A DNA stretch of 64,000 nucleotides from Oikopleura dioica (Eukaryota; Animalia; Chordata), in contig OU015568.1 in assembly GCA_907165135.1 (NCBI GenBank), forward strand, positions 8,680,001-8,744,000, read 5' to 3'. The notes beneath the pieces are model-generated. The model saw only the letters and a program-made list of their open reading frames with translations, made no database searches and was not told the DNA's origin. Of the stretch, positions 28,661-63,689 are shown one piece after another; within the stretch, counting starts at the first letter, position 1, and every line of letters begins with the position of its first letter. The position numbers and the translations under genes are program-made.

Positions 28661-29325
28661 GGAAGCAGTAGAGGCAATTTCTGCGTTCTTTACGTCAGTC
28701 TTCCAAGGGATGATCGATCTCTTTTCATATCTCTGTGTTATTTAAGCGCCTGGTTTTTAACTCCTTGGTTTACGATTTTTATATAAAAGATATGTGTGAT
28801 TCATCATCCCGTATTCATCACCGATTGAAGAAAAATCAAAAAAAATCGAAAATCAAATCGAAAAATTAGCGAAAAAAAAGTTAAATCAGCCGAATCACCG
28901 CAGCGAACCACCAATTTCTGTGGAAGTTAACAAAAAAACGAAACGAACGATATGGGATTTTGCATTCGTTGAGGAATCTCACCCACTCGCCCGCGGCAAC
29001 ATTTGCACCCGCTTGCGGCGTAAGCACGACCCGCGTAGCTCTTGCCTCCATCGCCGCTGCAAGTCAATCAGTAACTACAGACCGAAAAGCAAATAACACA
29101 AATTTACAACCGAGAGCAACATTTGCAACGGACACACAGATAAACAACATCAGATGCGCGCGGCTTCGGGCACACACGCGAAGACAACCGTGTTTGACCG
29201 TCAAATACGAATCAACGTTGCCAATTCTCTATCAAGCAAAAGTTCACCTGGAGAAAGTGCAATTCTCTTCCCATGCCAAAATTTCAAAATGATGCAGTTG
29301 TCATTTTTATTCAAAATAAAGCAAG

Positions 29326-29541
29326 TCAGGTCTCTTCAAGAATAGTTTCAAGCGTTCTTGAGCTCTTCGCAAGCTCTCGATCAACCGATAATTTCGATGG
29401 TCTTTCTTTGAAGAATTTGCTTCTGATTTTCTTCCTCACAAAGATCGAGAAATTCCAACTCTCCGGGACAATCCATGAAATAAGTAGAATCACAAAAATG
29501 ATACAAAATCCTCGTTTTATTTCGTCTGCTGATTTTCTCAT
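29326..29541 (-). CDS. Putative 71-aa single-pass membrane micropeptide (or terminal exon of an unidentified model)
   Basis: MRKSADEIKRGFCIIFVILLISWIVPESWNFSIFVRKKIRSKFFK...ETILEET*. Strong acceptor TTTATTTTTAG near 29564 upstream and AATAAA about 15-20 nt after the stop. Confidence 0.45.
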   Translation of the reverse strand: MRKSADEIKRGFCIIFVILLISWIVPESWNFSIFVRKKIRSKFFKERPSKLSVDRELAKSSRTLETILEET

Positions 29542-30101
29542 GTCAATTTGATGCGTAAATGTCCTAAAAATAAACCGTTCAGAAAATCTCAACTCTGCCC
29601 ATGGGCGATGCCAGTATGATTTAGATAAGAATTTCGTCTGCAATAAATCGTAAAAACAGCCTGCAAATTTATAAACAAACTACCCTTTGTTTCATTCCAA
29701 ATGTTTTTTATTCAGATAGTTGAATTCCAAAGCTGGGTACAGTGAAAACAAGAACAGAATAGAAAAAAGTGCACAAAATTTGAAACATCAATCGCAGTAC
29801 AAAAACAGGTTCTCACATAATCACATTTTTAGAGAATAAGTGGGAGTGCTGCCCAACTGGTGGTTTTTATTTTTCAACCCATGGGCCCGAGCACGACTTT
29901 TTCTAGAGCACTGACGGCGCTTGAAGCTGCCAAGTCTAAAGTGCAGGTGAAAAGACGACTGCGGATTTTGTTACCCAAGGATTTTTTGATAACCAGCTAA
30001 TTTGGGATTGTGGAAATCATATTCCATCTTTTTTAATTAATTTGTGATTATGCGGGGATAAATAAAGTTTACAGGAAAGATTGTACAGTCATAAAAAGGT
30101 A

Positions 30102-33100
30102 TTAAACCTTGATAGTGTCTCGAACAATCTGCTTGTATTCGACCTTGTAGCTGTTGATTTTGGCTCCGCCATCGTCCTCTGGCTTGTTCCATTCAACAGC
30201 AACATATCCATCTCCGACGTCGGTGACGTTGATTCGGCCAACTGGTCCAGGTGGTCCAGAAGCTCGGAAGCTTTCATCAAGAGCGCAAGCTGGGCCTTCG
30301 CCGAATTCGTTGACGGCCTTGACTCGGAAGAAGTATACGAGGCCTCGGACAAGTCCTTCGATTCTGAAGTTCTGTCGGGTGACATTTTCAGCGGCGGTTT
30401 TCCATGCTTTCTTGGTGGATTCCTTCATCTCAATGACATAGTTGCTGACAATAGATCCACCATCGTTGACGGGAGCGTTCCATTGAAGAGTGACGTAGTC
30501 GGTGCTCTTTTCCTTGATGCAGATGTCGGTAGGAGCAGAGGGAGTATCCTGAATGACGACGTTGACGGTAACTTCTTTGGATCCAGCAGAGGAGGAGATG
30601 GTGACAGCGTAAGCGCCGGAGTCGTTTCGGTTGGGCTTCTCAACTTCGAGTCGAGTGCTGCCCATGCCAGATTCGACAAAGACGCGATCTGGGAGTGGCA
30701 TGTTGTCCTTCTTCCAGGAAATGGATGGGGCAGGGTTGCCAGTAACCTTTCCGTTGATACGAAGAGGAACTCCGGCCTTGACCTTGAGAGCCTGCTTGAT
30801 AGAGCAGTCCAAGTCGATCTCGGGAGCGATCATGATGATCTGCGGCTTGTATGGATCGAAGAGAGCAACAGCTTCGGACTCAGCGGTATTGTTGAAAGCA
30901 ATAACTCGGAAGAGATAGTTGTTCAACTCAGAGAGGCCGGGAATGGTGTAGTGAAGGTTGGTGTTGCGGATGATGATCTTCTGGTACTCAGCTTCGACAC
31001 CTTCAGCGGGCTGAATAGCGTACTCAACAGCGTAGCCAATAATATCGCTGCCGCCATCGAAGTTAGGCTTGTTCCAGCCAAGAGTGACAGAAGTGTTGGT
31101 AGAAGTCTCGACGCGAATATTGGTTGGTCCAGATGGTGGATAAATAGGATTGACCATGTGCACATATGGTGATGGATCAGAAGGTTCAGATTGGCCAGCA
31201 GCGTTCTCAGCAATGACTCGGAATTCATAAGATCGCTCCATAGCGAGTCCGGAGATTCGAGTTCGGCATTCGGAGACACGCTTTTTGACGGCTCGCACCC
31301 ATCGCATACCGTCCTTGTCTCGTTTCTCGACGACGTAGTTTTCGATCTCAGCGCCACCAGTTTCGACAGGTCGAGTCCAGGTGAGAGTGAGAGAGCCATC
31401 GACAACATTTGAGGCTTCAGGAGAGCCAGGCTTGCTAGCGGGATCGTATGGGTTCTTGGCCTTGGCGGCCTTGGACTCAATAACTTCACCCTTGCCGTAC
31501 TTGTTGACACCAGCGACTCGGAAGATGTATTCGTTTCCTTCGAAAAGGTTAGCGCACTTGTAGCTGGTAGAAGTGATGTCAGAGCCAACCAAAGTCCAGG
31601 CGAGATGAGATGTCTCTCGTTTTTCAATGGTGTAAGAAGAAACATCAGCTCCGCCATTATCAACTGGCGCGTCCCAGCTCAATCGCATAGTAGTCTTGTT
31701 CATAACCTTGACAGTGAGGTGGTCACATGGTCCAGGTCGGGAAAGAACTCGCACTCGGATCTCGCCATTGTCGATACCGCCAATGTTTCGGGCAGAAACG
31801 CCATAAGTGCCAGTATCAAGTCGGGAAGCTTCCTTGATCTCGATCCAGCTTTCTCGCTCATCGTTTCGGATTCGAACGTTCTTGGTTTCAACAAGATCTT
31901 TGCCATCCTTGGTCCACTTAACTTGAGGAAGAGGAGTTCCTTGGAGATGAACCATGAATTTAAGGCTGTCGCAGGCCTTGGCCATGACAACATCCTTGTA
32001 CTTGGCATCAATCAAGACCTTGGGAGAAGTGATTTCATCCTTAGGCGTGATCTCATCAGAGGACTCGGACCATTCAGAAAGAGTGTTGGCAGCGTTCTTT
32101 GCCTGAACTCTGAATCTGTAGGCAGTGTTTTCTTCGAGGCCAGTGACGTTGAATCGGGTCTCGAGAACGTTGGAGAAGTTACATTTGAGCCATCGGCCCT
32201 TGTTACCTTCTTCTTCCTTTTCAATGGTGTAGCCAGTAATCTTGGCACCGCCATCGTACGCAGGCTTTTCCCAAGCGATCAAAGAAGATGTTCGACCAAG
32301 TTCAAGAAGTTCGGGCTTGCCGCATCGCTCGCATTGATCCTTGCACATGATTCCTTCAGAAGCTTGAGACCACTTAGATCTACCGGCTCGGTTTTCAGCG
32401 CAAACTCGGAACTCGTAAGTAGCACCATCAGCAAGGTTGCTGACTTGAGCTTGGAGAGCCTTGAGTGAGCCTCGAACGGCAGAAGTCCAGACGAGAGCAG
32501 ATCGCTCCTTCTTTTCCAAGAGGTAGCCAGTGATCTTGTCACCACCGTTGTTTGCTGGCTCGTTCCACTTGACCTTGATCCAGTTTCGGCTAGCTTCAAC
32601 GACAGTTGGGGCACTTGGTGCATATGGAGCTCGGAATGGCCACTCAGCCTTCAAGTTCTGAGAGACGAGAGGATCAGATCTACCGAATCGGTTCTCAGCA
32701 AAGACTCGGAACTTGTACTCAGAACCAGCGCGCAAGTTCTTGGCCTTGTAGCAAGCTCGAACAACAGTACCAGCGATTTCAACCCATTGGTCAGAGTCGG
32801 ACTCGCGGCATTGGACGATGTAATTGGCAATCTGAGCGCCGCCATCTTCCTTTGGTGCAGACCAGGTAAGAGTAGCGGAAGTGGTATTGACGTCGCTAAA
32901 CTCAATTGGTCCAACGGGGATAGATGGTCGATCCAAGACGACGAATCGGAGCTTCGATTGTTTCTCACCGGCAGATGATTTAGTAGTAAGAACGAATTCG
33001 TCGGCATCAGATCGGACAGCATCGGCGATCTGGAGTCGAGTGTAGAGAATGCCGTTCTCAGTGAACATCTCTGTGTTTGCTCGCTGAGTTTCTCTCCAGG

Positions 33101-36100
33101 TTCCCTCGGAGTTGTTCCATCGAGTGACTGGAGCTGGCTTACCGATGACTGGGATTCGGAGGTCGACGTTCTCGCCAGCGCGACAAGTGTAGCTGGACAT
33201 GTAAAGTTGACGCATATCCAAATCAGGAGCAATGATGTGGTCCTTGGCGACTTCAGTCAATCGAGTCTCAATAGGCTCAGAAAGGCCGATTGCGTTCTTG
33301 GCCATAACTCGGAAAACGTAACCAGCACCCTCCTTGAGGTTGGTGCAGGTGTAGGTGTTCTTGGTTGTGGTGCCCTGTTCGAGCCAGGTTTCAGCACCAA
33401 CAACAGAGAGGGCCATTTCCACAACGTAACCGGTGACAGCAGATCCTCCATCAGAAAGTGGCTTAGTCCAGGCGATCTGGCCAGTAGATTTGGTCATCTC
33501 GACAACATCGATAGACATTGGCTGATCAGGCTTAGAAGCAATGATCGATGGCTCCTCGGTGACGCCTTCTTTACCATCGCCGTACTTGTTGACACCTCTG
33601 ACTCGGAAGAAATAGCTTTCGCCAGTGATAAGAGATTTGACAACGCACATTTCTCGCTCGCACTTGTCCGTGACAGTAGTCCAAGATTTTTTATCAGCGG
33701 TCTTCTTCTCAACAATGTAGTGAGTGATAGGAGCACAACCGTCATTGGCAGGAGTATCCCAAGTGAGCTTGACATCATCCTTTCCGATATCGGCAACGCG
33801 AACGTTGAGTGGAGCAGATGGCGCATCAATAACTCTGACGGAGACAGCGCCATCTTTAGATCCAGCTGCAGATTCCAAAACAAATTCGTATCGTCCAGAA
33901 TCAAGAACAGTAGCTCGCTCGATAATAAGAGTAGATCGACCCTTCTGAGTGTCGACAACAGCGAGCTCGTTCAAGTCGCCTTCAGCTTTTCTCCAGGTGA
34001 TAGTTGGCTCTGGTCGACCCTTCATCTTCAAGCTGATTCGGAACGTAGCGCCGGCCTTGACCATCATAGTGCGCTGGCATTCGACATCAAGCTCGAACAT
34101 TGGTGGCTCGACAATATCGTCGGCAGTGACCCATCCAGAGTCCTGAGAAGCGTCAGAAGCCCCAACATCATTACAAGCAATAACTCGGAAAGCGATCATC
34201 TTCTGATCAAGTCCAGTGATCTTGTACTCAGTATCTGGAATTGGAAGTGCAGTGACTGGCTGGTAATTGATATCATCAGCAGCAGCGTCTTGAACAGCCA
34301 TTTCGACGATGTAGTTCTTGATTGGAGCACCGCCATCATGAATTGGCTTAGCCCATCGAAGATGGATCATATTCTTGTTAGAGTCAACAATCTTTGGCGA
34401 TCCAGGCTTGGATGGTGGGTAGAGTGGATCCTGAGCAGTTCCGTAGTCAGAAGCTTCAGATACAGCGCCAACACCGGCCTTGTTAATAGCAGAAACGCGG
34501 AATTCGTACTCGTTACCGGCCTGGAGGTGAGCAACACGAAGTCGACACTCGTGGACAGCGCTCTTGTGAGCGCGGACCCAGTTCATGTTCTTCTTGTTAC
34601 GACGCTCAACCTGGTAGCCAGTGATTTGGCTGCCACCATCATGAGTAGGTCTATCCCAAGTGATGGTGATAGAGTCAGACATGGTTGCGGCGATCTTTGG
34701 CTTTCCAGGAGCTCTTGGAACAGTGAAGTCGTTCTTGATGACAACAGCTTCGGATTCTTTAGGATATCCGGTTCCGTATTTGTTTGCGGGACTGACTCGG
34801 AAGATGTACTGGTTATCCTTGATTAATCTTTTGATGGTGCAGTTGGTCTGTCTGCAATCATCATCGACAGTAGTCCAAATAAGTCGGCTTGTTTCTCGCT
34901 TTTCGACAATGTATCGCTGAATTTCGCTGCCACCAGTTTCCTTTGGTGGAGACCACTGAAGTCGGACTCGTTCTTCAGTGACACCGTAGACCTTAACTTG
35001 GTCAACAGCGCCAGGTCGGTCGAGAACGGCAATATGGCAAGACAAGCTAGCAGTTCCGTAGTGGTTGGAAACAGTGCAGTTGTAATCGCCAGCGTGTTTA
35101 AGCTTTGAATCCTTGATCAAGAGCTCAGAGGTCTTGGGGCCGTTGGTGATCTTGACAAAGTCGTTTTCGCGGACATCAGCGTTACCGTGCATCCAGGCAA
35201 CACGTGGGATAGGCTTGCCGCTGATCTTAGCGGTAATCAAGATATCCTGGCCAGCTCGGACAGTGCAGCCCTCAAGAAGAGTCTGATCGAATTCAACAGA
35301 AGCTGGAATGTAGACATCCTTAACGTCGATTTCGACAACTGGCTTGCAAGGCTTGGAAGAGCAGCCAGCAGTGTTGCGAGCGATAACTCGGAAGTCATAG
35401 CAGCAGCCATCGATGAGGTCGGTGACGGTGTAGTGGAGGGTCTGGACGCCGGTGAAGTTGGCCTTCTGCCAGATCTTTCCGGGATGCTTTCGGTATTCGA
35501 TGTCGTAACCAGCAAGTCGGTGACCACCAGTGTACTTAGGGCCAACCCAAGAAAGAGAAACAGTAGAAGCGGTGATGTCATCAACCTTGAGATCATAGGG
35601 CGCATCGCAAGGATCAAGAGCCTTAGCGCACCAAGTTGGATCAGAAGGTTCAGAAGCACCGGCAATGTTGCAAGCACGAACTCGGAACTGATACTCGAGG
35701 CCTTCGATGAGACCGTTGACTCGGCCTTCAGTCGATCTGGTTTCACATCCTTCCTTCCAGAATTGAGAGTTGTTTTCTCTAAATTCAACGATGTAGTGAG
35801 TGACTCGTGAGCCGCCAGATTTTCGTGGAGGGCTGAAGTCGATGGTCATAGATTCCTTGTGAATCTCGCTAATGGCAACATCCTGTGGAGCAGATGGAAC
35901 GGCGAATGGATACTTGGCAAGAGCAGTTTCAGTCACAACAGGGGTAGAAAGACCGATTCGGTTCTCAGCCATGACGCGGAAAGTGTATTCGAGTCCAGCA
36001 ACAAGGCCAGAGATTCGGCAATTAGTTCTGCTGACAGAATTCGACACCAAGTTCCAGTTGCAGGAGTCGTTGTCTCGCTTTTCAACAGTGTAGCCAGAAA

Positions 36101-39100
36101 TATCAGCTCCGCCAGTATCTTTCGGCATATTCCAGTTGAGAAGAGCGAAGTCAGCATTGATTTCGACGATTTCAAGCTTTTCAACAGGCTCAGGTCGTCC
36201 AAGGACAACGATTCGCATCTTAGCAGAAACTTCACCAGCAGAGTTCGAAGCAATCATCTGGTACGAACCAGCATCTTCTTTGTGCACGTTCTTGTTGATA
36301 AACATTGAACACCATGTGGAGTTGTCGATTTCAGTGCGAGAATCCTCCTTGACAGTGACATAGAGATCATCTTCTTCGAGCTTCTTCCATCGAATTTCTG
36401 GCTTAGGCTTACCAGTGAAAGGAATCTTGATCTTCTTGGAAGTTCCCTCTCGAAGATAAACAGTATTGCTTGGGTAGTCAGAAGTATTGACGGTTGGCTT
36501 TTCAGATGGATCTCGGCCAGCGATGATCTTTTCTCGTGGCTCACCGACTCCAGCAATGGATTTGGCCGAGATTCGGACAACATATTCGACGTCCATCTCC
36601 ATACCAGTGCATTTGTAGATGCAGTTCTTCTGGAAGTTGAGCTCGATCCATTTTTCTTTCTTTGCATCAAAGTCGGCCTTTTTGCACCATTCGATGAGAT
36701 ATCCAGTGATTCTAGAGCCGCCATCGTATTCTGGCTTGGCCCAGACAAAGTTGGCAAATGTCTTAGTTGCAGCGGTAATCTCGAATTTTGTGATTGGACC
36801 AGGAGTCTGGCAGACACGGATTGGGCCGATCACAGCGCCAGCACCGACACCATATTCGTTCTCACCAAGAACTCGGAAGTTGTAGTTTCGGCCAAGTTCA
36901 AGTCCAGTGACGTTGATGGAGCACTTGGGATTTTCAGTAGCAAAAGTAGACCAGGCCTTTCGTCCGGAAAGCTGTTTCTCAACGATGTAGTTGCTGACAG
37001 CAGATCCACCATCAATATCGGGAAGCTCCCAGGTAAGTTGTACGGTGTTTGACTTGATATCTTTAACGGCCAAAGCATTAACTGGGCCAGGAGAATCAAG
37101 AACACGAACGTTCACTTGGGCTTGCTTATTGCCAGCATTGTTTTCAACGAGCATGATGTACTTGCCAGTATCATTTCGAGTAGCCTCGGTAATGACAAGA
37201 GAAGCATCCCAATCAGATTGCTTGATTTCAGCACGGTTGAGTGCGATCTCCCCGTCAAGTTTGCTCCAGCTCACCTTGGGTGCAGGGCGAGCAGAAATCT
37301 TTGCGTAGATTCGAATTGGCGCACCTGCTCGGACCATGATTGTTCGCTGGCAAGTGGCGTCGAGCTCGATCTCAGGAACTTCGACGATATCAATTGGAAT
37401 GAAAGGCTCTTCGAGAACGGAGGGTTCAGATTCGCCAGCCTGATTAACAGCAGTAATCTGAGCTCGATATTCTCGGCCGCCAGTAAGACCAGTAACATTG
37501 ACGCTGCAGACCTTAGAAGCGCCAAATTTGACGAATTTTTCTGGGTCTTCTGGCTTGGCAATGTAGACGTTGTAGCCAGTAATTTCTAGACCTCCGTCGT
37601 AGGCGGGCTTAGTCCACTTGATAAAGGCAGATGATCGAGTCATATCGGCGAGCTTGGGGAAGGCTGGTGGTGCTGGTGGATAAGTTGGATCAGCAGCCAC
37701 AACAGATCGAGAAGGTCCAGATGGGTCACCAAGACCAGCGCTGTTTTCAGCAATGACTCGGAATTCGTACTCAGTTCCTTCAGAAAGTCCGCCGCACTTG
37801 TAAGTTCGATCAAGAACAGCTCGTCGGTTGACCTTAGACCACTGGAAGTTCTTAGTCTCACGCTTTTCAACGTAGTAACCGGAAATTGGTTTTCCGCCAT
37901 CATCAGATGGGACCTTCCATGAAAGAGTGACAGTGGAAGCGGTCGAGTTCTGGATCATTGGTGGGTTGCAAGCCTTTGGTGGACCGAAAGGATTCTTAGC
38001 AACAACGGCTTCAGAAATCTTTGGCTGACCAAGACCGAATTTGTTTTCAGCAGTAACTCGGAAGACGTATTCGTGCTGCGCAATCAGCTTGGGCACAGTA
38101 AAGTCAGTCGAGACAATAGCCGAAGAAACAACAACCCAGGTTGGTCGAGAGGTTTCTCGCTTCTCAACAACGTAGTTTGTGACAGCAGAACCACCATCAA
38201 GGGCAGGAGCATCCCAAGAAAGGTTAAGTTTCTCGGCAAAGACTCGAGAGATCTTGATATTTTCTGGAGGACCAGGCTTGTCAAGAATGACAACCTTGAC
38301 CTTCTGAACAGCTTCGCCGGATGGATTCTTAGCAGAAACGACGTAGTCACCACCGCTAGAGAGGTTCACATTCTTGAGAGTGAAGACAGATCGGTTCAAA
38401 GATGTCTTGATGGTCTGGCTTTCACCGAAAGATCCAAGTGGAGCCTCACCCTTCATCCATTTGATTTCAGGCTTTGGCTTGCCCTGGAATTTAGCATCAA
38501 TAACGAGCTCTTCACCAGCTCTGATTTCAAGCTGATTTTTGCTATCAAGTCCAGCAACATCAAGAGATGGAGGAAGAATTTCCTGTCGAACAAGGACTGG
38601 ACCAAGGGACTCAGACCAAGGAGAAACAGTTGCGATAGTCTTGGCGCAGACTCGGAACTCGTACTGAGCACCTTCTTCCAATTCTTTGATAGTGGCGTGG
38701 TTGTTGGGATAGCGTGCATGTGCCTTCTCCCACCAGAGACCATCAGGAAGTTTTCGCATTTCGACCGTGTAGCTGACGACACGAGTACCACCATCTTTTC
38801 GTGGTTCATTCCAGGAGATTTCAGCGTGGCTGTTGGAAACGTCGACAACTTCAAGATTCATTGGTGGATCGCAAGGCTCTCGGATGCAAACAGGCTCAGT
38901 TGGCTTAGACAAAGCTCCCTGTCCGCACTGATTAACAGCAGCAACTCGGAACTGATATTCGAGTGATTCAATGAGAGAAATGTCGTTGAATTCTCGTCGC
39001 TTGATCAGACCCTTGTTGACCTTGTACCAAAGGATAGAGTTAACTTCCTTGCGTTCGATGTTGTAACCCTTGATAGTTGCACCGCCATCATTAGCTGGAG

Positions 39101-42100
39101 CTTCCCAAGACATGAGGCAAGAGTCTCGAGTGATTCGAACGATCTTGAGCGATCTTGGCTCTTCTGGTGGATTGAATTGGTATTTGGCGACCATGTTCTC
39201 GGAGAGAAGCGATTCAGACTGGCCAACCTTGTTTTCAGCTCGAACTCGGAAGATGTACTCAGAGCCCTTGTTGAGTTTGTCAACGCGGTAGACGCATCGG
39301 CTGACAGTGGAAGAAAGAGTCTTCCAGCCAGAAACCTGGACTTCCATAGCCTCAACGATGTATCCATTGATACCGCATCCACCATCATCAGCGGAAGGCT
39401 CCCAGTTAAGAGTGCAAGAGTCGACGGAAACATCAGTGAAGACAATTGGGCCGACTGGAACAGTAGGAGCATCAAGAACAGTGACTTCACACTTGACAGA
39501 AGAAACACCGTGTTTGTTCTTAGCATTGAGCTGGTAGATTCTAGAATCTCCTCGGTTAGACTTCATGCAAAGAATGGTAGCTCGTTTGTTAGTTCGCTGG
39601 GTAGAAAGTCGATCAGTTTCGGCGATTTCTTCCATGGTTTCACCATCGACCCACTGGACGAATGGTTTAGGCTCACCAGAAACGAGAGCGTCAATCTGAA
39701 TTGGCTCGCCAGCTCTGACATGCATTTCCTTGATCATGTTGATAAGGGGCTTCTCAGCAGGCTCCTTGACGGTGATCCATTCAGTTTCTCGTCGAGAACC
39801 GGTAAGAGACTCGTTCTTGGCCTTGATAGCGAACATGTACTTCGAGTTCTCCTCAAGTCCGTGAACAGTGCACTCGGTATCGATGATATCTCGATAAGTT
39901 CTGTAATTGTCAGCATCCTTTGGTCGGATTTCGACAGTGTATCCAGTAATCTTGGATCCACCGGTATCAGCAGGAGCTTCCCAAGTAAGAGTGCATCGGT
40001 CCTTAGCCATTTCGCTAACTTGGAGTCGGCCAACTGGTCCGGGCTCGGTGAGAGGCTTTCGAGCTCGAGTTGCCTTGAGAGTTTCAAAGACAACACCTTC
40101 ACCCCACTTGTTGACAGCGACGATTCGGAAATAGTACTCTTTGCCTTCAAATAGCTTATCGACCTTGACAGACTGTCGGGTGAGCTCGTGATCAACTCGC
40201 GACCAGGTCTTTTGGTCAGACTCACGCTTGTCAAGTCTGTAGTGTGTGATTTCAGCACCACCGTCGTTGTCTGGAGCGCTGAAAGTAATGGAACAACCGT
40301 TTTCAGTGACATCCTTGACGACAACATCTTGGACTTTACCAGGAGTGTCCTGGACAGTAACATTGATGTTGACTGAGGCAGAGCTCTTTTCGTTTGAAAC
40401 CGTAAGAGTGTATCGACCAGAGTCATTTCGATCAGCAGTTGGGATCAAGAGAGAAGTAGAATCAGCCTTGATGTCAACATCAGCTCGTCGGCTGATAGAT
40501 TCGCCAACCTTCGACCATTTGGCAGTTGGAGCAGGTCGACCAGAAAACTTAGCCTGAAGAAGGAGTTGCTGACCAGCTCGAATATAAGTTCGTTGCTGGA
40601 ATTCTCTGGCAATTTCGATCGAGGGCTCGATAGAAATGTCTTCGGGCTGGAAGAGCTCTTCGATCTCGGCGTATTCTCCAGTTCCCGCGTTGTTAATGCA
40701 AGCAACTCGGAAGAAATACTTTTCCTCGGGTTTGAGAGAAGCAACGGTGTAGCCACTGACTCGAATAGACGGTTTGATATCGATTCGAGACCACAAGTTG
40801 TAAGCCTTATCCTTTTCTTTGCAGTATTCAAGGACGAATCCGATAAGTGGAGATCCACCATCATAAGCTGGAGCAGCCCAAGAAAGAGATGCAGAAGAGG
40901 CTGATTGATCAACAATCTTAAAGCCTAAAGGGGCTTGTGGCACAACAATAGGATCATGAGGCTTGATTGGCTTGGAAACCATGGATGGCTCGGAAACACC
41001 AACTTCGTTTTCAGCTCGAATTCGGAACTGATACTCGATCTGGTCAGACAGTCCAAGAGCCTTGTATCGTCGGTCAGGAACGGAATGCATGTTGCATGGC
41101 ACCCATCTGACACCCTTCTTTTCTCGTTTTTCGATAAAGTAGCCGAGGATGGATTTGCCACCATCAGATTCTGGCTCAGCCCAGCTAAGCTGAACAAAGT
41201 CCTTGGTGAACTTGGTGATTTCAGGCTGTGGTGGAGCTGAAGGAGGAGAGAAGGGGTTCTTAGCAACCATTGGGCTAGATTCGATGTAGTGAGAAACTCC
41301 CATCTTATTCTGAGCGCGAACTCTGAAGATGTACTCATTTCCTTCAACAAGATGAGGTGCAGTAACGATTGGAACTCGAATAGATTCAGTGACGATGCCC
41401 CAAACCATTCTGTTAGTAGCGGCCTTTTCGATGCAATAGTTGGTGATTGGAGTTCCTCCATCGTCCTTTGGCAAATCCCATGAGAGGGTCATTCTATCCT
41501 TCATGACAGTAATGAATCGAATAGGACCAGTGCAAGGAGCAGGCTTGTCGATAACAGTAATGTTGCAGGTAGCAGTAGCTTCTCCGTACTCGTTGGTAGC
41601 AACGATGTTGTAGTTGCCAGAGTGTTCTCTAGCGCAACCATTGATGACGAGCTCAGTTTCATTTTCTCTGTTGTTAACCGAGCATTTTGGCACTTTGAAC
41701 ATGTCCTTATCGCCGTTCATGATCTTGACATCAGGGTATGGGATTCCAGAGACCTTGGCAAGAAGTTTTAGGGTAGTGCCAGCCTTGACGACCAAGTTGC
41801 CCTTCTCGAGCTTGGTAGCGATCTCGCAAGTTGGTGGAGCGGCGTCATCTTTCATTTCAATAGGGCCGACAGTCACGTGGTCAGAGTTACCAGCCTTGTT
41901 CGTGGCAACGACGGAGAATGTCCAGCTGTCACCTTCGGCAATACCAGAGCTGACCTTGATTCGCTTGGTTTTGAAAGCTTCTCGGTTAACAAGCTCTTCG
42001 AATTCCTTGGAGGCACCCTTCTTTCCGAGAACCTTGTAGTGAGAAATTGGCTCTCCACCATCCCATTCAGGTCGTTCGTAAGTGAACTCGATGAAGTCTT

Positions 42101-45100
42101 TGCCTCGAGAGTGAATCTTGACATCTCGAACAGGCATTGGCTTAACGAATGGATCGACCATGCAAGTTGGCTTTTGGTTTCGACGGATGGACCTTGACCG
42201 CACTTGTTTTCGGCAGTAACTCGGAAGAAGTAGTCGTGACCTTCAGAGCCTCGAGCCTTGATCATTCGCTTGGTGCCTTCGGAAGAAACCAAAGACCAGC
42301 CCATGAAGCTGAATCCTGGTTGCTGTGGCTCTCGCATTTCAAGGACGTAGTTGATGACTTCAGTGCCACCTTCATCCTCTGGAGCATCCCAAGAAACGAC
42401 GCAGCCACCCTTGGAAGGATAGCTAGTTCGGATATTTCGGCATGGGCCGGGCTTGTCAAGAATATTGATGGAAATCTTTCCACTAGCCTCGCCAGCTTCG
42501 TTCTTTGCAGTGACAATGTAATCACCAGAATCGGATCGAACAGAGTCCTTCATCTTCATCTCAACACCGAGGGGAGTTTCTTTGAAGAAGAATCGTTCAG
42601 ATTCAATAGGTTTGCCCTTGTAGCTCCAAGTGACTTCTGGCGCGGGTTTGCCTCGGATGATTGCTCCGACCTTGACGATGTTACCGACTCGGTAGTTGTG
42701 GACACCTCGGACACCTTGTTCAACTTCCACCTCGGGCTCGATGAGGATATCTTTGCACTGAACAGTTTCAGAAAGCTCAGCCCACTCAGATTCGCTAAAT
42801 TCAGTGACAGCACAAACTCGAAGTCGGTACTTCTGCTTGTCCTTGAGACCGTTGATTTTGTAGGTGTTAGAGAGAGAAGCGTTCTGATTAGCTCGTTTCC
42901 AGTCTTCCTGTCCATACAGCTGGAGCTCAAGGAAATAACCAAGAATTGGTTTTCCTCCATCCTTGAGTGGCTTGTTCCAAGTAGCGGTGATAGAATTCTT
43001 AGAAACATCAAGAATTTTGATGTTGAATGGAGCGCCTGGAGCAGTAACTGGTCGCTCAGCAGTAAAAACTTCAGAAGGATCAGATGGCTTAGACTTTCCA
43101 CCAGCGTTCTCGGAAGTTACACGGAACTGATATTGTCGTCCGTCGAAAAGTCCCTTCACTCGCATAGTGTTACCAAGAATTGGCTCGTGATTGCACTTGG
43201 CCCACTTGCCAGTTTCCTTGTCGAGTCGCTCAATAGTGTAACCAAGGATTGGGCTTCCACCGTCGGACTCAGGAGTTTTCCAGGTTACAGTGCAAGCAGA
43301 TTCGATGATATCGACAACCTTTGGTGGGAGAGTCTTCTGTGGTGGTTCGAAAGAGTGCTTTGCAATGACAGGCTCAGAAATGAGTGGTTCAGAGACGCCA
43401 TATTTGTTCTCAGCTCGAACTCGGAAGAGATAAGACTTGCCGGCAATAAGTCGGGGGACCTTGATTTTGTTTCGGCTGCCCTTTGAAGAAACCATTGACC
43501 ACTGTTCTTTTGGTGGTGGGAGGCCTTCCTTGACAGGCTTTTGCTGGAGTTTCTCGACGATGTAGTTAGAGATTGTGTTTCCACCATCGTCTTTTGGTGC
43601 TTGCCAGCCGATAACAGCGTATTCTGGAGTAACTTCCTCCATTTGAATGGGTCCAACTGGGGGTTCTGGTCGATCAAGAACAGTGCAGTGAATGACAGCA
43701 GTCTTTGCACCAGCATCGTTCTTGGCGGTCAAAGAGTATTCACCGGTGTCGCCTCGCTGAGCCTTTTTGATCAAAAGGATAGAAGATCCCTTTTCTTCTT
43801 GAATCTCAACTCGGTTCTCCTCAGTGCTTTCAAGTGGCTCGCCGCTAGCACTTGCCCAGACGGTTTCCGGAGCAGGAATACCCTTTACCATGGCGGGCAC
43901 TGTGATCGTAGAACCAGCTCGAACAGTCAAGCCTTCAAGGATCTTCACGTTGATGTTGATTGAAGGAGAAATGAGCTTAGCAGTTGGAACAACTGGAATA
44001 GTTGAGTCAGGTCGACCTTCACCGGCTTCGTTGATGGCTCGAACTCGGAATTTGTAGGCAACATTTTCCATGAGTCCAGTAACGGTGCACTTGAAAGTAG
44101 AGACGGTCTTGTAGTCTTCCCATGCGCTGATCTTTGTCTGCTTCTCGCCGTATTCATCTTCGACTTCTTCTTCAGTGCACATTTCGATTCTGTAAGATGT
44201 GACTGGAGAACCGCCATCTCGACCAGGTCGGTTCCATGCGAGGGAGATGTTATCCTTGTCGATATCAGTGACTTCCAAGTTCTGTGGGATAGATGGAGGA
44301 TGGATTGGGTTTCGAGCGATTACTTCATCAGTCTCAGCTGGTCGACCCATACCGAAGCAGTTCTCTGCGAAAACTCGGAATCGGTAAGTTTCTCCTTCGA
44401 TCAAATATTTGACCTCAATGTTGTTCTTCTTGTGAGAAAGAGCAATAGGCTTCCAATCCTGATTTCCATCGCCCTTGGCAATTCGCTCAACTCGGTAGTG
44501 GCTGATAACAGTTCCGCCATTGTCAGATGGAGTCTTCCAAGAAAGTCGAAGAGACTCAGCGTGAACTTCAGTGATTTTCATGTCACGTGGTGGCGATGGA
44601 ATGTCAAGAACGGACACAAAACAGGAAGCAACCTTCTTGCCCATAGAGTTTTCGGCCTGAATGCAGAATCGGCCAGTGTGAGCTCGCTGAGCGTCGACGA
44701 TGATGAGTTTAGTTCGGTTGTCCTGAGTCTGAATAAGCTTAGACTCAATCTCTTTATCGCCATTGACGGGGTCGTTCTTGATCCACTTGACAGTTGGCTT
44801 TGGAGTACCAGAAATAACGGCTGAAAGGACAAGCTCGCTACCAGCCTTGACTACTCGTTCGTTGACCATGTTGCCATCGGGAGTGATTTCTGGTGGAGCA
44901 AGCTTTTCGACAACAACAACAGTATCTCGCATAACTCCGGGCTCGGAAGTGCCAGCGGCATTAACAGCCTTTACTCGAATGTAGTACTCGAACGACTCAG
45001 TAAGGTCAGGAATGAGGAAGCTTGTAGTCTTCTGAGTTTCAGAAGTACACCAGGTCTTCCAGACGTCAGTGCCGACCTTGTTTGTTTCAACAATGTATCC

Positions 45101-48100
45101 ATCGATGGCGCAGTTTCCATTGTGTCGTGGTGGGTTCCAGCTAATGGAAACGGTGCTGCCCTTGATAGCATTTACACCAATGTTGATTGGCATAGATGGT
45201 GGGTTGATTGGATCTCGGCAGAGCACAGCCTTGGATGGAACAGATGCCGGAGAAAGACCAATGGAGTTTTCAGCCATAACTCGGAATTCGTACTCGTTTC
45301 CTTCGAGCAGTTCTCGAACGGTGTACTTGTTCTCAGTGATGAGCTCCTTTGTGACTCGGATCCATCGCTCGGATTGAGTCTCTCGTTTCTCAACTCGGTA
45401 GTTGAGAATTCGCTTGCCGCCATCATATGGCTTGTTCCATTCGAGAAGAACACGGTCCTTGAAAGTTTCCTTGGCTCGGACATTGTCAGGGGCATCTGGG
45501 ATCTTGTATCGATCTCGAATGACCACAGTGGGAGTGTCAACAGGATCGGAAAGACCGTAGCTGTTTTCAGCCATGACTCGGAACTGGAATTCTCCGTTTT
45601 CTCTGAGCTTAGAAACTCGGATTTCGTTCTTGAGGCAGGCGTTGTTGACAGTGAGCCACATCATTCGCTGCATATCCTTCTTTTCAACGACGTAGTTGGA
45701 GATTGTCTCACCGCCGTCATCTTCAGGATCGTCCCACTTGAGGAGAACAAACTCACGAGTGACTTCAACAACGTCAAGGTTGCGGACAAGAGCAGGCTTG
45801 TCAGCAATGACGACTTCGACTCGTGCGGATTTCTCACCAGCACTGTTGGCGACCTTGATATTGTACATACCAGAGTCTTTTCGCTCGGCGTTGTAGATGG
45901 AGAGCATTGAGGTAGTTGCGGTGTTCTTTGTTCGGATTCGATCAGCAGCAGGAAGCTCGTGGTTGTTATGAGTCCATGTGACTCGTGGAGAAGGCTTGCC
46001 ACCGATAAAGGCAGGAATCTGGAGAGAGTTACCAACTCGGCAGATAAGCTTTTCTCGGCAATCAAGGTCGAGCTTTGGCATAATGATTAGATCTCGGCAG
46101 ATGCAAGGCTTGGTGGGGAAGGATGGCTTTCCAGCACCCATTTCGTTGAAAGCAATGACTCGGAATTCGAAGTTGTCACCTTCAGAGAATCCAGTTAAAG
46201 TAGCCTGGCAGTCAGAGAAAGCTTTTTCGGAGGCTTCAACGTATCGCTCCTGACCGACTCGTCGTTTTTCAACAACGTAGTGAGTGATTGGAGCACCACC
46301 ATCGAAAGCAGGAGTTTTCCAGCTAAGAAGAACTCGATCTCGCATGACATCTTCATACTTGAGCTCTTCAGGTCGAGCAGGAGTGCCGACAGGATCTCGA
46401 GAAGTAATTGGAAGAGCAGTCTCAAGGAAAGGTCCAACGCCCATGACGTTTTCAGCGGCGACTCGGAACATGTAGCTCTCATCAGGCTGCAAGCCCTGGA
46501 TGACAATCTTTGTTCGAGTGACAGACATCGAGACCTTTGTCCAGGATCGTCGAGAAGATTCTCGCTTTTCGACAATGTAGTTAGTGATTTCAGTACCACC
46601 ATTGTCTTCTGGCTTCTGCCATTCAAGCGTGACTGAATCCTTGACGATATTGGTGCAGTTAACTGGGCCAACAGGGAGACCAGGAACGGACAAAACGTTG
46701 ACGTTGATGTCGGCAGAGATTGATTTCTCGCCAGCCTGAGCTGTGATTGTGTAGACACCAGCGTGTTCTCGCTCAGAAGATCGGATGGTCAAAGTGTGGT
46801 TAATGACTGAGCTGTCGATTCGAGCAAGTTCTGGTACATCTTCTCCCTTGAATTTCCAGGAAACGGTTGGCTCTGGTCGACCAGTGACATAAGCAACAAG
46901 TCGAAGCTGCTTGCCGTTCTTGACAGTCAGGCCATCCTTGAGAAGAGCATCGAGTTTGATTTCAGGGTCGATCTTGATTTCTTCAACAACGACGTATTCT
47001 TCAAGAGTAGCTGGTTCAGACTGACCGGCTTCATTGACAGCCAAGACTCGGAACTTGATCTTTTAGATCGGTCGAGATCCTTGACAGTAACGTCATGGCT
47101 GCGGACTTCATGGCCGTAGACCTTCTCCCAAAGTTCCTCGGGCTCCTTTTCAGGATCTTCTGGAACGGTTCGAGTACCTTCGTAGTGTTTTTCAATGAAA
47201 TAGCCTCGGACCTTTGATCCGCCATCAGCCTCAGGCGAGTTCCATCGAAGATTGACAGTGCTGTCTGTCTTGTCATGGACGGCAAAGTTTCTTGGCTCAC
47301 TTGGTGGATGAATTGGTGGTCGGGCAATAGCACCAAGAGAAGGCTGAGAGAATTCAGAAGTACCAGCAGCATTGACAGCAGCAACTCTGTAAAGGTACTC
47401 TGTGCCCTCGTTAAGACCTCGAACTCGATATTCTTCGTTGGGAATGAGCTCATGAACGACTCGAGTCCATTTTCGCTGGATTCGAGTTCGCTTTTCGAGA
47501 ATGTACCCATTGATAGCAGCTCCGCCGTTGTCACTTGGAGGATCCCATCGAACAGTCATGGAATCTCGAAGAACGCCATCGACGAGTGGTGGTTCCATTC
47601 GGCCAGTGACTTCGCACAAGTTCTTCGCGACAAATGGCTCAGATTTGAGGTAAGGACCTTGGCCGTACTGGTTGACAGCAGCGACACGGTAGATGTAGTG
47701 CTTGCCCTTGTGAAGCTCTGTAGAAGTAACTTCGCAAGATTTGAGCTCTTCACCAACTGGAGCCCAGTACTGTCGGTCAGTGACACATCGTTCAACGATG
47801 TAGTGGCTGATGTGACATCCACCGTCATCGACTGGAGGAAGCCAAGTAATAGACTGCGAGGAAGCAGTGCAGTTTGCAAGAGTGATTGGGCCAGAAGGTG
47901 CACCAGGCTTGGAAAGAATGACGACCATAATCTGCTTAGAACCAACGCCAGCGGCATTAGTTGCGCGAACGGTGTACGATCCCTTGTCGTCTCGGACACT
48001 CTCGTCGATAATGAGGTTACTGGAGCCAACCTCATTCTTCACCTTGACTCGTGGATCAGTAATTGGCTGATCGTTCTTGAGCCATTCAACCTCCGGAATC

Positions 48101-51100
48101 GGGTTACCGGTGATTTTTGCGTTGATATCGAGCTTCATGTTGTTCTCAATTTCCTTGAATCCGAGAACTTCGATTCCAGGGAAAATAATGTCGTCCTTGC
48201 AGGTAACGGGACCGACGACGTTGGATGGTCTTGACTCACCGTAATCATTGATAGCAATTACTCGGAAGGAAGGAGTCGAGCCTGGCTTAAGGCCCTTGAC
48301 TGTGTACTCGGTATCGGTAATGATGACCTTGTTGCAGGCTTCCCAGACTTCAAGATCTCGTTTAGTGAGTCGTCGCTGCTTGAGAGCTCGTCGCTCAGGA
48401 GATTGAGTACCATCGTTGTTTCGAGGCTTGGTCGCGAGATAATCTTCGTATGTAATTCGGTGCTCAGAGGCGACCATTGGTGGATGCTGACCGTCGAATT
48501 CCATCATTGGAAGAGAAGCAGGGGCAGATTTACCCTTGGCGTTGACAGCGATGATACCGAAAGTCCATTCGCCTTGGGCGATGCCGGTGACCTTGTATCG
48601 AGTATCGTGGACAACATCGAACTCTTCCCACTGAGTAGAACCGCCCTTCATACCAACAACAATGTAGCTGCTGATAATGCCAGCTTTCTTTGGCTGAACC
48701 CAACCGAGGGTGATATTGTCGATACCAGAGTCCATTACAGAGACTGGTCCAGGTGGGCTAGAAACATCAGTTGGTCCAGCTTCACCATCAGCGGGCTTGA
48801 CTTCAGCGGCAGCCTTGACAGCAGCTTCCAATTTTTCACCGAGAGCATCGTGAGCTTCGTCTTGGAAGAACTCATCGGCAGAGATTCGTTTCTTGAGCAT
48901 TTCGACCTGATAAGTGGTGATTGGAAGATTACCAGTGAATTCTGGAGCCTTCCAGGTGAGAGAACAGGTCTTTGAAGTGATCTTGTTGATCTTGAGGTGA
49001 AGTGGTGGCTCAGAAAGACCAACTGGATCTCGTGCGATGACTGGGTCAGTAGTATAGACGAATTCACCCTGGCCGACCTGGTTAACAGCAGAAACTCGGA
49101 AGAAGTAAGACTCATTCTCGAGAACGTCATTGCACTGGTAGGTGAGACCGCCAATAACGGATTCGACTCGAGTCCATCCTCGCATATCTTCTCGTCGCTT
49201 ATCAACAACATAGTGAGAGATTCGAGCACCACCGTCGAGTGCTGGTGGCTCGTACTGAAGTTTGACCGACTTCTTTGTGACACCGACGACCTGAAGCTTC
49301 TGTGGGTTGCCGGGAGTATCGAGAACGATAACTCGGCAAGCGCACTGGCGAACACCACCAGCATTCTTAGCAATCAATGTGTATTTGCCAGAGTGCTTTC
49401 GGTTAGCAGCTGGGATAATGAGAGTGGAAGTTGAATCAGTAGACTCAATCTTTGCATCTTCGCTAATTGGCTGGCTCTCTTCGAATTGCCACTTCTGAGT
49501 AGCAGTTGGTCGAGCGTCGATGGTAGCTTTCACTCGGAGAGTGGATCCAGAATGAATAACCAAAGCGTCTCGGAGACCAGCATCAATGCTGATAAGTGGA
49601 GCTTCGATAAGTTCTCGGCATTCAATTGGAGGAGTGGAGAACGAGAATGATGATTCACCAGCCTTATTCACAGCCTTCACTCGGAACTGGTACTTGAAAC
49701 CCTTTCGGAGATTGTCCTTGGTGAACATAGTCTGCTTGATGAAATCATCATTATCGTAGTTCTTCTGAGCAACCTTGGCGCGGACTCTCTGGGAAGTCTC
49801 ACCGCCACCAAGGCCAAGAGATTCCTTGAGTTTCATCTTCTTGAATGCATCGGCAGCAGTTTCTTTCTGTTCATCAGTAAGATCGCCTTCGATGTTATTT
49901 TCGGCAGCCCAGGCTTTAATAAATTTGCCTTCTTCCTCAGCCGCAGCTTTTTCTTCAGCAGCTTTAGCTGCTTCAGCGGCCTTGGCCTTTTCCTCCTCGG
50001 CCTTGGCCGCCTTAGCAGCTCGATCTTCCTCAGATTGGTATGAGACAACTTGCCAGGCGCAGGTAATCTCGTCCATCATTTCCATGATGTAACCAATGAG
50101 CGGAGTTCCACCAAGCTTGCTTGGTTGAGACCAAGAGAGAGAAATAGAATTGTCAGTAGTGTCGTCAACCTCTGGTTTGCCGGGAGTAGATGGAGGGAAG
50201 ATGGGATCAGAGGCGAGGGCGTATTCAGAAACACCACTGACTGCACCAGTTCCAGCCGCATTGACAGCAGATACTCGGAATCGGTACTCAATGCCTTCGA
50301 TGACATCAGTGTATCGGAATTCGCATTTTTGCATTGGTGGCTTGGTGATCGGAGCTCGCTGAACTTTTCGCCATCGGATGTTGTCAGTGTCCTGGACTTC
50401 GAGCCAGTAACCTTCGATGTGCGCGCCACCGTCGTTCTTTGGTGGATTCCAGGTCACGATGATGAAATCCTTTCGATTCTCTTCGATAGTGGGGGTGCTT
50501 GGAGCATCGGGAACAACGTAAGGGTTCTTAGCGACGACTGGACCGAGTTCAGCCCATTCGCCAACACCGAATCGAGACTCAGCTGCAACTCGGAAGTGGT
50601 ATTCAACTCCTTCTTGAAGCTTGGTTACTCGGTATTTGGTTTCGACAACAGTCTGAGAGCAGCTGATCCATTCGAGTTTGCGACCTTCTCGTCTTTCAAC
50701 AACGTAGTTCATAATGGAATCACCACCATCATCAGAACCATCATCCTCTGGTGGTCGCCAATCAAGCTGAGCACTGTCCGCAGTGACATCATCAATGGTA
50801 AAATTGAGTGGAGGAGAAGCGACGCTGTTGACATCGAGCTGGACTCGGCAGAACTTGCTACCGTGAATATTGACAGCTCGGCAGATGTAGAAACCGACAT
50901 CGTCTCGAGTACATTTTCGAATGACGAGGTTGTTGTTGTCGCCGATAACGTGGAGCTCATGATGTTCTGGTTCCTGGCCCTCAGGAAGATCTTTGGGAGT
51001 CTCAGTAATGAGCCGAGGTCCATCAAGAGACTCGAAAGTCCAGGTAACGTGAGCTGGTGGCACAGCGTGGACGTAAGCCGGAACAGAGACAAGATCGCCC

Positions 51101-56655: not shown

Positions 56656-57044
56656 TTGGGTTTGGTCACTTGGCAGTGTCGATATCGTATTGTCTGAAAA
56701 ATGAAATTATAATGATTTCTGTAAGAACTCAATAATAATGATTCATTTTAAACGTGTACAGGGACATAATGTCTATTTATAGTTTTGATTAACATTTTCA
56801 AAGTACAACTAAAAAGCTATCGACATCTCAGTGAGAATTTTCGCTCAAATCTTCTTAGATCTCTCGTCTGCAACTCAAAAAAGTACAAAACTGGAGCGCC
56901 TGGGCATATTATTTTTAAAAATCTCGCATAGATGTGTGCAGATAGACGAGCTAAGACGCGGGTAGCAAGTTAACACTTAGCACCTAAGCCTGTACCAGAA
57001 ATTTCTATTTCTGCACATCGCTTACGCAAGGGACGCTTACTCAC

Positions 57045-57300: not shown

Positions 57301-57372
57301 TCGGATTAGAATGTTTTCTTGTTTATATGGTTTATTAGAAAATGAAAAGAAAAGTGTATAATACTTGGTTTA

Positions 57373-60950: not shown

Positions 60951-60955
60951 TAACG

Positions 60956-63663: not shown

Positions 63664-63689
63664 CAAAAAAGAGTTTTTTTGAAAATCTA

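What the first reader, a model, noticed from the sequence alone, without database searches (positions are those of the whole stretch)
29820..30256. Titin chain stops mid-domain: C-terminus is only strands A-B-C of an Fn3
The last domain reads PPGPVGRINVTDVGDGYVAVEWNKPEDDGGAKINSYKVEYKQIVRDTIK, then either GTT TAA or a phase-0 donor at 30107. No Fn3 continuation exists on the minus strand downstream in the window. Candidate tails are MEYDFHNPKLAGYQKILG* (30027-29971), or a 39-nt intron (29974-29936) leading to a strongly basic tail (...SFKRRQCSRKSRARAHGLKNK...). AATAAA at about 29710 suggests a real 3' end. The break is at the C-C' loop, the same loop that hosts insertions elsewhere in this protein.
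Basis: partly seen in the sequence, partly recalled or inferred. Interest (0 to 1): 0.7.

Follow-up and report, generated by a model that had tools for sequence, protein, structure and literature searches.

The report
Titin gene ends inside a domain

Summary
The minus-strand titin A-band gene (ATG 56655) runs to ...YKVEYKQIVRDTIK-V-TAA at 30102. Its last 54 residues match only the first half of an Fn3 domain (Pfam positions 2-38 of 84). No second half exists anywhere else in the window, on either strand.

This is not a misassembly. Metagenome contigs of two other O. dioica lineages (dS about 1.0-1.1) end at the same Val-stop and keep the same downstream neighbours. The half-domain is under full purifying selection: 19 synonymous and 0 non-synonymous differences against one lineage.

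Instead there is a normal-looking 3' UTR:
- a diverged stretch;
- a roughly 110-nt conserved block that folds as a hairpin on the sense strand;
- a conserved AATAAA at 29712;
- then a small conserved gene.

My best reading is an old gene fission, with this piece translated as a separate chain. The retained A-B-C half probably pairs with the C'-G half that starts the tail gene, which an earlier scan note (s1-346171) places about 1.45 Mb away. Trans-splicing of the mRNAs is not excluded.

The parts
30108..30266 (-). Terminal half Fn3 (strands A, B, C and the start of the C-C' loop), ending ...YKVEYKQIVRDTIK
   Evidence: Pfam fn3 profile positions 2-38 of 84, E 9.6e-6. Own HMM positions 2-44. 0 non-synonymous against 19 synonymous differences to L001.
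30102..30107 (-). Val codon (GTT; GTC in L002) followed by the TAA stop.
   Evidence: The stop is conserved in the window, L001 and L002. Position +3 of the would-be donor is T or C, whereas six introns I read by eye in this window all have A there.
30267..30563 (-). Last complete Fn3 domain before the half-domain
   Evidence: Pfam fn3 positions 1-76 of 84; HMM map.
29986..30101 (-). Poorly conserved first part of the 3' UTR.
   Evidence: 43-66% identity with indels between lineages.
29876..29985 (-). Conserved non-coding block that folds as a long imperfect hairpin on the titin sense strand
   Evidence: 83-88% identity against 42-72% in the flanks. Sense strand: MFE -37 kcal/mol, z -2.6. Antisense strand: z -0.1. 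All indels fall in unpaired columns, and two one-sided changes keep G-U pairs. No Rfam family matches.
29707..29712 (-). AATAAA, the likely poly(A) signal of the titin piece
   Evidence: Aligned and conserved in L002, together with the preceding ACTGTACCCAGCT.
29326..29541 (-). Next gene downstream: a small conserved ORF (71 aa, one hydrophobic helix). It is not a titin exon.
   Evidence: 68% identical to L002:1828-2046 with a frame-preserving indel. The stretch upstream of its ATG is not conserved as coding. The identical L002 product is called on three metagenome contigs. No Pfam family.
55950..56655 (-). 5' end of the same gene: ATG at 56655, two short introns, an acidic unique sequence, then the complementary C'-G half of an Fn3
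   Evidence: fn3 profile positions 43-82 of 84. The NCBI O. dioica model P0274 starts at the same ATG.
30102..56655 (-). The whole titin A-band piece, about 8,800 codons. D-zone-type 7-domain repeats are followed by C-zone-type 11-domain repeats.
   Evidence: Best database relatives are vertebrate titins and a Ciona savignyi protein named Titin.

Best explanation
This is one product of an old fission of the titin gene in the Oikopleura dioica lineage. The A-band piece (ATG 56655 to TAA 30102) is a transcription unit of its own. It has conserved upstream sequence, its own start codon, a stop one codon after the break, a roughly 400-nt 3' UTR and a conserved poly(A) signal. The protein therefore ends ...DTIKV with only strands A-B-C of an Fn3.

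The break lies in the C-C' loop. In this protein that loop tolerates long acidic inserts and even a whole inserted domain, so the fission probably happened inside such a loop insert or an intron there.

Inferred, not shown: the retained half-domain is functional because it folds together with the complementary C'-E-F-G half at the start of the next chain. That chain is the tail gene, about 1.45 Mb away according to scan note s1-346171. The two halves would rebuild one Fn3 without a covalent link and join the chains end to end on the thick filament, where A-band titin is bound to myosin and carries little stretch.
For: Shown:
- The break and the absence of any continuation in the window.
- The same ...TIK-V-TAA end in three lineages: the window, L001, and the L002 lineage, which recurs as L006.
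- Those lineages are deeply diverged from the window (dS 1.0-1.1). Against the Bergen reference, measured at the 5' end of the gene, dS is 1.19.
- The half-domain shows 19 synonymous and 0 non-synonymous differences to L001, and 15 and 2 to L002 (omega 0-0.03). The rest of the gene has omega 0.03-0.04, and none of 34 other 54-codon bins has zero non-synonymous changes.
- The sequence after the stop diverges (43-66% identity), then comes a conserved sense-strand hairpin and a conserved AATAAA.
- The next gene and the RRM gene downstream, and the genes upstream of the 5' end, are collinear in other lineages.
- The 5' end has its own ATG, conserved in the NCBI model P0274. A 73%-identical relative from a marine catalogue (P0275) also starts with unique acidic sequence plus the C'-G half.
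- AlphaFold2 models the N-terminal half-Fn3 and the unique part at pLDDT below 50, while the next complete Fn3 is confident. The start cassette therefore does not visibly complete its own half.

From the literature: high-affinity fragment complementation of an Fn3 domain has been reported (Dutta et al. 2005). I know this only by its title, cited in PMC11666773. My memory that their cut separated strands A-B-C from the rest is unchecked.
Against:
- I could not read the tail gene. I could not check that its first half-domain fits this one, nor model the pair.
- Conservation of the half-domain is explained equally well if the mRNAs are trans-spliced.
- The AlphaFold2 run on the C-terminal 153 aa without an alignment was uninformative, since even the complete Fn3 was poorly modelled.
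Confidence: 0.62

Rival explanations
1. Genic trans-splicing. GT at 30107 is a working phase-0 donor. The pre-mRNA of this piece is spliced in trans to the acceptor in front of the tail gene's half-Fn3 exon. One covalent titin with an intact Fn3 is then translated, as with the split Hsp90 gene of Giardia.
For: - AAG|GT is conserved in all three lineages.
- The orphan half-domain is under full purifying selection.
- O. dioica has the machinery for spliced-leader trans-splicing (PMC11067885).
- A conserved roughly 110-nt structured block lies just downstream of the site.
- Split genes 777 kb apart are joined this way in Giardia (abstract of PMC8494341).
Against: - The donor is poor: GTTTAA or GTCTAA, with a pyrimidine at +3, where six introns read in this window have A.
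- An in-frame stop one codon later is conserved.
- This piece, and by scan note s1-346171 the tail too, begins with its own conserved ATG exon. A trans-spliced product would not need that.
- The conserved 3' block shows no complementarity to this gene's own homologous start region beyond background: 38 of 196 and 27 of 100 control windows pair as well or better. The true partner could not be tested.
Confidence: 0.15
2. Separate chain, but with no pairing of halves. The A-B-C stretch is kept for another reason, for example as a binding strand for myosin, MyBP-C or another partner, or to protect the preceding domain.
For: Same evidence for a real 3' end as in the best explanation. Nothing here directly shows contact between the two halves.
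Against: - The conserved residues are the usual core residues of Fn3 strands B and C (the W in VAVEW, the Y in YKVEY). Alone they would be exposed.
- Both ends of this gene, and by scan note s1-346171 the start of the tail, carry complementary halves cut at the same loop.
Confidence: 0.15
3. The mRNA is cis-spliced from 30107 to a nearby small exon, for example the acceptor at 29936, which would give ...DTIK-TWQLQAPSVL*. The protein would then carry a short extra tail.
For: - A TAG|A acceptor-like site and a GGGTAAC donor-like site inside the conserved block are kept in all three lineages.
- The peptide xWQLQAPSV would be shared and begins with the W expected for strand C'.
Against: - The block has no excess of third-position changes.
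- It carries 1-2-nt indels.
- The predicted tails differ in length and sequence after APSV (10, 21 and 19 aa).
- The putative intron part is as conserved as the putative exon part.
- The donor is weak.
Confidence: 0.05
4. Assembly artefact: a misjoin at 30.1 kb in a long-read assembly.
For: The assembly does carry errors. One-base losses in A-runs break the titin frame at about 47058-47061 and 42172-42175, and they probably break WDR19 too.
Against: The same junction, 3' UTR and downstream genes are present in independently assembled metagenome contigs from several samples, representing two other lineages.
Confidence: 0.02

Closest known systems
Vertebrate titin (TTN), A-band C-zone
   Same: - The same 11-domain super-repeat (Ig-Fn3-Fn3-Ig-Fn3-Fn3-Fn3-Ig-Fn3-Fn3-Fn3), preceded by 7-domain repeats.
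- The best database relatives are vertebrate titins at 35-40% identity.
   Different: Vertebrate titin is one chain from Z-disc to M-band. Here the gene stops inside the third domain of the fourth C-zone-type repeat, and the rest is encoded elsewhere (scan notes s1-346171 and s1-322892).
Invertebrate division of titin functions (Drosophila sallimus and projectin; C. elegans TTN-1 and twitchin)
   Same: The jobs of titin are shared by several separate Ig/Fn3 chains (general knowledge, not tested here).
   Different: Those are distinct genes whose boundaries lie between domains. Here a true titin orthologue is cut inside a domain, and both halves are kept.
Engineered Fn3 fragment complementation (Dutta, Batori, Koide and Koide 2005, Protein Sci 14:2838)
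   Same: An Fn3 cut in a loop into two fragments that reassemble with high affinity. I have only the title, as cited in PMC11666773.
   Different: That system is man-made and uses a small monobody scaffold. The paper was not held, so my memory of where they cut is unchecked.
Donor-strand complementation in chaperone-usher pili, and the titin Z1Z2-telethonin beta-sheet clamp
   Same: Chains are joined without a covalent bond by completing or extending an Ig-like beta-sandwich with strands from another chain (general knowledge).
   Different: One strand, or a separate small protein, is donated there. Here half a domain on each chain would be involved, and nothing has been shown experimentally.
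Split genes joined by trans-splicing (Giardia Hsp90, PMC8494341)
   Same: One ancestral gene lies in distant pieces on the same chromosome, with a GT at the break.
   Different: Giardia has canonical splice signals and complementary half-introns. Here the donor is weak, a conserved stop follows at once, and the next-piece type of start has its own ATG.

Membership tests
Titin (chordate TTN orthologue, A-band part) | Ig/Fn3 super-repeats of 7 domains (D-zone) and 11 domains (C-zone) | tested here: met
   The HMM domain map gives I-FF-I-FFF units followed by three full I-FF-I-FFF-I-FFF units.
Titin (chordate TTN orthologue, A-band part) | Closest relatives are titins rather than twitchin, projectin or obscurin | tested here: met
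   Top hits are named Titin in vertebrates and Ciona savignyi, at 34-41% identity. Twitchin-like proteins score lower.
Titin (chordate TTN orthologue, A-band part) | A single chain continuing to the kinase and the M-band | tested here: not met
   The ORF stops at 30102 and the window holds no continuation. The kinase lies about 1.45 Mb away according to scan note s1-346201, which I did not read myself.
Fibronectin type III domain (PF00041) | A complete seven-strand sandwich (profile positions 1-84) | tested here: not met
   Only profile positions 2-38 are present at the C-terminus, and only 43-82 at the N-terminus of the same gene.
Trans-spliced split gene (Giardia Hsp90 type) | A canonical 5' splice site at the break | tested here: inconclusive
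   GT is conserved, but positions +3 to +6 are TTAA or CTAA. Six local introns have A at +3.
Trans-spliced split gene (Giardia Hsp90 type) | Complementary sequences in the two half-introns | not testable with these tools
   The partner locus is outside the window. The surrogate test against this gene's own start region was negative.
Trans-spliced split gene (Giardia Hsp90 type) | A chimeric mature mRNA | not testable with these tools
Split-domain (fragment-complementing) protein pair | Both fragments retained under purifying selection | tested here: met
   The C-terminal half has omega 0-0.03. The N-terminal half of this gene is nearly invariant even in a relative that is 73% identical overall.
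Split-domain (fragment-complementing) protein pair | Physical association of the two fragments | not testable with these tools

The most novel reading that the evidence does not exclude
Oikopleura titin is a chain of separate polypeptides coupled end to end by split Fn3 domains. The A-B-C half that ends one chain and the C'-G half that starts the next would fold into one domain. A non-covalent joint would then replace the peptide bond inside the thick-filament ruler.
Probability: 0.4. Interest if true: 0.85.

Novelty: new variant of a known kind. Interest (0 to 1): 0.66.

Why it matters
In vertebrates, titin is regarded as a single-molecule ruler and spring spanning half a sarcomere. Here a chordate with fast striated tail muscle has its true titin orthologue cut inside the C-zone. 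This is a natural test of whether covalent continuity is needed for thick-filament length control and for C-zone and MyBP-C patterning.

The strong selection on an orphan half-domain points either to a natural split-domain joint or to genic trans-splicing of a giant mRNA. Either would be unusual in an animal. Both can be tested directly with standard RNA and protein work in a laboratory organism.

The case also shows that the genome scrambling known in O. dioica can break an essential giant gene without destroying it. Two full-text searches of the held literature found no description of this.

Tried and rejected
- **Reads.** No RNA or raw-read evidence exists in this report.
- **Protein databases.** Two word searches with the C-terminus and the representative search returned no close O. 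dioica titin. The only near hit, P0001 (63% identity), stops about 100 residues before the end and runs into adapter sequence.
- **Rfam.** The region 29200-30200 gave only chance-level hits, none in the conserved block.
- **RNA pairing.** Pairing of the conserved 3' block with this gene's own exon 1 first looked good against shuffles. It is ordinary against real control windows, so I rejected it.
- **Automatic intron finder.** An attempt to build a donor matrix this way produced mostly false positives. I used six introns read by eye instead.
- **AlphaFold2 on the C-terminal 153 aa.** Run without an alignment, it was uninformative.
- **Domain matching.** Matching the terminal halves to particular repeat positions did not discriminate well.
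- **Small ORF look-up.** An exact look-up of the window's small ORF found nothing.
- The joined-sequence steps, including a fold of half plus half, were left out.
Full report
**What is there.** On the minus strand, a nearly intron-free Ig/Fn3 gene runs from ATG 56655 to TAA 30102. It appears as three giant ORFs: 56190-46927, 47044-41873 and 42203-30102. The last ORF ends ...AAG GTT TAA, and the protein ends ...PPGPVGRINVTDVGDGYVAVEWNKPEDDGGAKINSYKVEYKQIVRDTIKV.

- Pfam places the last 54 residues on fn3 profile positions 2-38 of 84 (E 9.6e-6).
- An Fn3 HMM that I built from 29 domains of this protein places them on positions 2-44 of 102.
- A tblastn with the last 1500 residues (E<=10) and the HMM at maximum sensitivity on all six frames find no further Fn3 sequence in 1-30110 or 56100-64000.

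**Which part of titin.** The domain map shows 7-domain units (Ig-Fn3-Fn3-Ig-Fn3-Fn3-Fn3). These are followed by three complete 11-domain units (Ig-Fn3-Fn3-Ig-Fn3-Fn3-Fn3-Ig-Fn3-Fn3-Fn3), then Ig, Fn3 and the half Fn3. That is the D-zone and C-zone architecture of vertebrate titin, cut in the third domain of a fourth C-zone-type repeat.

The best relatives in 1.8 billion representatives and in the word-indexed database are vertebrate titins and a Ciona savignyi protein named Titin, at 34-41% identity. The organism is Oikopleura dioica. The N-terminal region is 88-91% identical to an NCBI O. dioica protein (P0274) encoded on scaffold FN653045.1 of GCA_000209535.1.

**Not an assembly artefact, and old.** A scan of JGI metagenome contigs with the last 200 residues returned two contigs with 95-96% protein identity (L001 from a 21.7-kb contig, and L002). 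An exact look-up added a further JGI sample and an ENA assembly of the L002 type (L006, L004).

In the DNA alignment, the window, L001 and L002 all read ...ACT ATC AAG GT(T/C) TAA. Synonymous divergence is large:
- dS 1.11 (window to L001), 1.01 (window to L002) and 0.48 (L001 to L002);
- dS 1.19 between the window and the Bergen reference at the 5' end of the gene.

The neighbours are also collinear. Downstream, the small ORF and the RRM gene match L004. Upstream of the 5' end, window 56.7-63.9 kb matches L003 7.0-10.0 kb. O. dioica genomes are known for extreme scrambling (PMC11067885). A shared break with shared flanks in three lineages therefore means the fission predates their split.

**The orphan half-domain is under selection.** I counted Nei-Gojobori differences for the last 54 codons.

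| Comparison | Synonymous | Non-synonymous | omega |
|---|---|---|---|
| Half-domain, window to L001 | 19 | 0 | 0 |
| Half-domain, window to L002 | 15 | 2 | 0.03 |
| Other 1812 codons, window to L001 | 734 | 175 | 0.039 |

None of the 34 other 54-codon bins has zero non-synonymous changes. From the gene-wide dN, about 5 non-synonymous changes were expected in the half-domain. Synonymous sites in the half-domain change freely, so the constraint is on the protein. A useless remnant is excluded.

**What follows the stop.**

| Window position (minus strand) | Identity between lineages | Feature |
|---|---|---|
| 29985-29876 | 83-88% | conserved block |
| 29875-29792 | 42-72% | diverged again |

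- **Conserved block.** Its 1-2-nt indels shift the frame between lineages. There is no third-position pattern, and the "intron" part is as conserved as the "exon" part. The constraint is therefore on the nucleotide sequence.
- **Hairpin.** On the titin sense strand the block folds into a 36-pair hairpin (-37 kcal/mol, z -2.6, 1 of 200 shuffles as good). The antisense strand is unremarkable (z -0.1). All indels lie in unpaired columns, and two substitutions keep pairs as G-U. With three sequences there is no compensatory change, so the structure is suggestive only. Rfam has nothing for it.
- **Poly(A) signal.** AATAAA at 29712, with the preceding ACTGTACCCAGCT, is conserved in L002. The ATTAAA at 30037 and the AATAAA at 29871 are not.
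- **Next gene.** About 165 nt further on, a small ORF starts (29541-29326, 71 aa). It is 68% identical in L002 with a frame-preserving indel. The sequence in front of its ATG is not conserved as coding, so it is the next gene and not a titin exon.

**Donor or stop?** The GT at 30107 is conserved, but the site reads GTTTAA or GTCTAA. Six introns that I could read by eye in this window start GTAAAA, GTAATC, GTATAT, GTATTT, GTAAAA and GTAAAG, all with A at +3. The T-to-C change in L002 is synonymous for Val.

This gene's own 5' end shows what a titin piece's start looks like here:
- a conserved upstream block (57107-56879);
- an acceptor at 56694;
- an ATG at 56655, shared with the Bergen model P0274;
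- two short introns and an acidic unique sequence;
- then the C'-G half of an Fn3 (fn3 profile positions 43-82).

A 73%-identical relative from a marine catalogue (P0275) has the same layout. An earlier scan note (s1-346171) reports that the tail gene, about 1.45-1.48 Mb away, starts in the same way and encodes about 11,000 residues. That figure fits the rest of C4, plus C5-C11, the kinase and the M-band. I could not read that locus.

**Most likely mechanism.** I read this as gene fission in the C-C' loop. The same HMM position 44 carries a 61-aa acidic insert in one internal Fn3 and a whole nested Fn3 in another. The N-terminal half-Fn3 of this gene is most similar to the second half of the domain with the acidic insert (weak). 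A loop that already tolerated long disordered inserts could be cut without destroying the fold, provided the halves still meet.

My best reading (0.62) is therefore a separate chain ending in A-B-C, probably pairing with the next chain's C'-G half. AlphaFold2 does not let the start cassette complete its own half: pLDDT is below 50 there, while the neighbouring full Fn3 reaches 63-92. Fn3 fragment complementation has been engineered (Dutta et al. 2005, cited in PMC11666773; the paper itself was not held). The pairing step is inference only.

**Rivals.**
- **Genic trans-splicing (0.15).** It would also explain the selection, and O. dioica has spliced-leader trans-splicing. Against it stand the weak donor, the conserved stop and the self-sufficient start of the pieces.
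- **Pairing test.** I tested whether the conserved 3' block pairs with this gene's own start region, as a stand-in for the tail's. It does not pair beyond control windows.
- **Short cis-spliced tail.** One such as TWQLQAPSVL cannot be excluded without RNA, but it is not supported by the conservation pattern.
- **Misassembly.** This is refuted.

**Limits.** There are no reads, no 3' end mapping and no test for chimeric RNA. 

**Prior knowledge.** Two full-text searches and two papers read gave no description of a split titin in Oikopleura. The scan itself has noted the other ends of this split before (s1-346171, s1-322892). New here are the cross-lineage proof of the 3' end, the selection test on the half-domain, the rejection of the proposed tails, and the conserved 3' UTR hairpin.

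Noticed in passing
window 29876-29985 (-): A block of about 110 nt in the titin 3' UTR is as conserved as coding sequence across lineages with dS about 1. It folds as a long hairpin on the sense strand only. It contains a GGGTAAC donor-like site and a TAG|A acceptor-like site. There is no Rfam match and its function is unknown.
   Followed up: partly
window 29326-29541 (-); L002 1828-2049: A small conserved ORF (71-73 aa) with one hydrophobic helix near the N-terminus and no Pfam family. It lies about 165 nt after the titin poly(A) signal, with a T-rich AG acceptor about 25 nt before its ATG. It may be a downstream gene of an operon with the titin piece.
   Followed up: partly
window about 47058-47061 and 42172-42175 (-); about 17757-17762 and 18377-18381 (+): Frame breaks with no intron, at short A or T runs, interrupt titin and probably WDR19. 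At 47058-47061 the Bergen assembly has one more base (AAGAAG against AAAAG). These look like one-base homopolymer errors of a long-read assembly, not real frameshifts.
   Followed up: partly
window 56879-57107 (-) and L003 9586-9814: A non-coding block of about 230 nt, 180-450 nt upstream of the titin piece's ATG, is highly conserved between the window and the Bergen genome. It includes a strong CAG|GTGAGTAAG donor at 57044. It is probably the promoter or leader exon of this piece.
   Followed up: no
window 56578-56694 (-): The first ~117 nt of exon 1 (5' UTR plus the first 24 codons) differ from Bergen by only 4 substitutions and one 4-nt indel, with no synonymous change, although dS elsewhere is about 1.2. 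If one base is missing in the A-run before the ATG, the reading frame would be open from the acceptor in both lineages.
   Followed up: partly
window 51351-51537 and 48384-48834 (-): Internal Fn3 domains are interrupted at the same loop position as the gene's two ends. One holds a roughly 61-75-aa acidic, PEVK-like insert and the other a whole Fn3. The acidic insert is also present in the distant relative P0275.
   Followed up: partly
   Followed up: no
window 29056-29229 (-) and L004 836-1009: A conserved non-coding block of about 175 nt lies upstream of the RRM (hnRNP R/Q-like) gene and is probably its promoter or leader.
   Followed up: no
L004 1-51: The ENA contig of the L002 lineage is 99.7% identical to L002 from 64 nt after the titin stop onward. 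Its first 51 nt are unrelated, which suggests a chimeric contig end or a structural variant.
   Followed up: no
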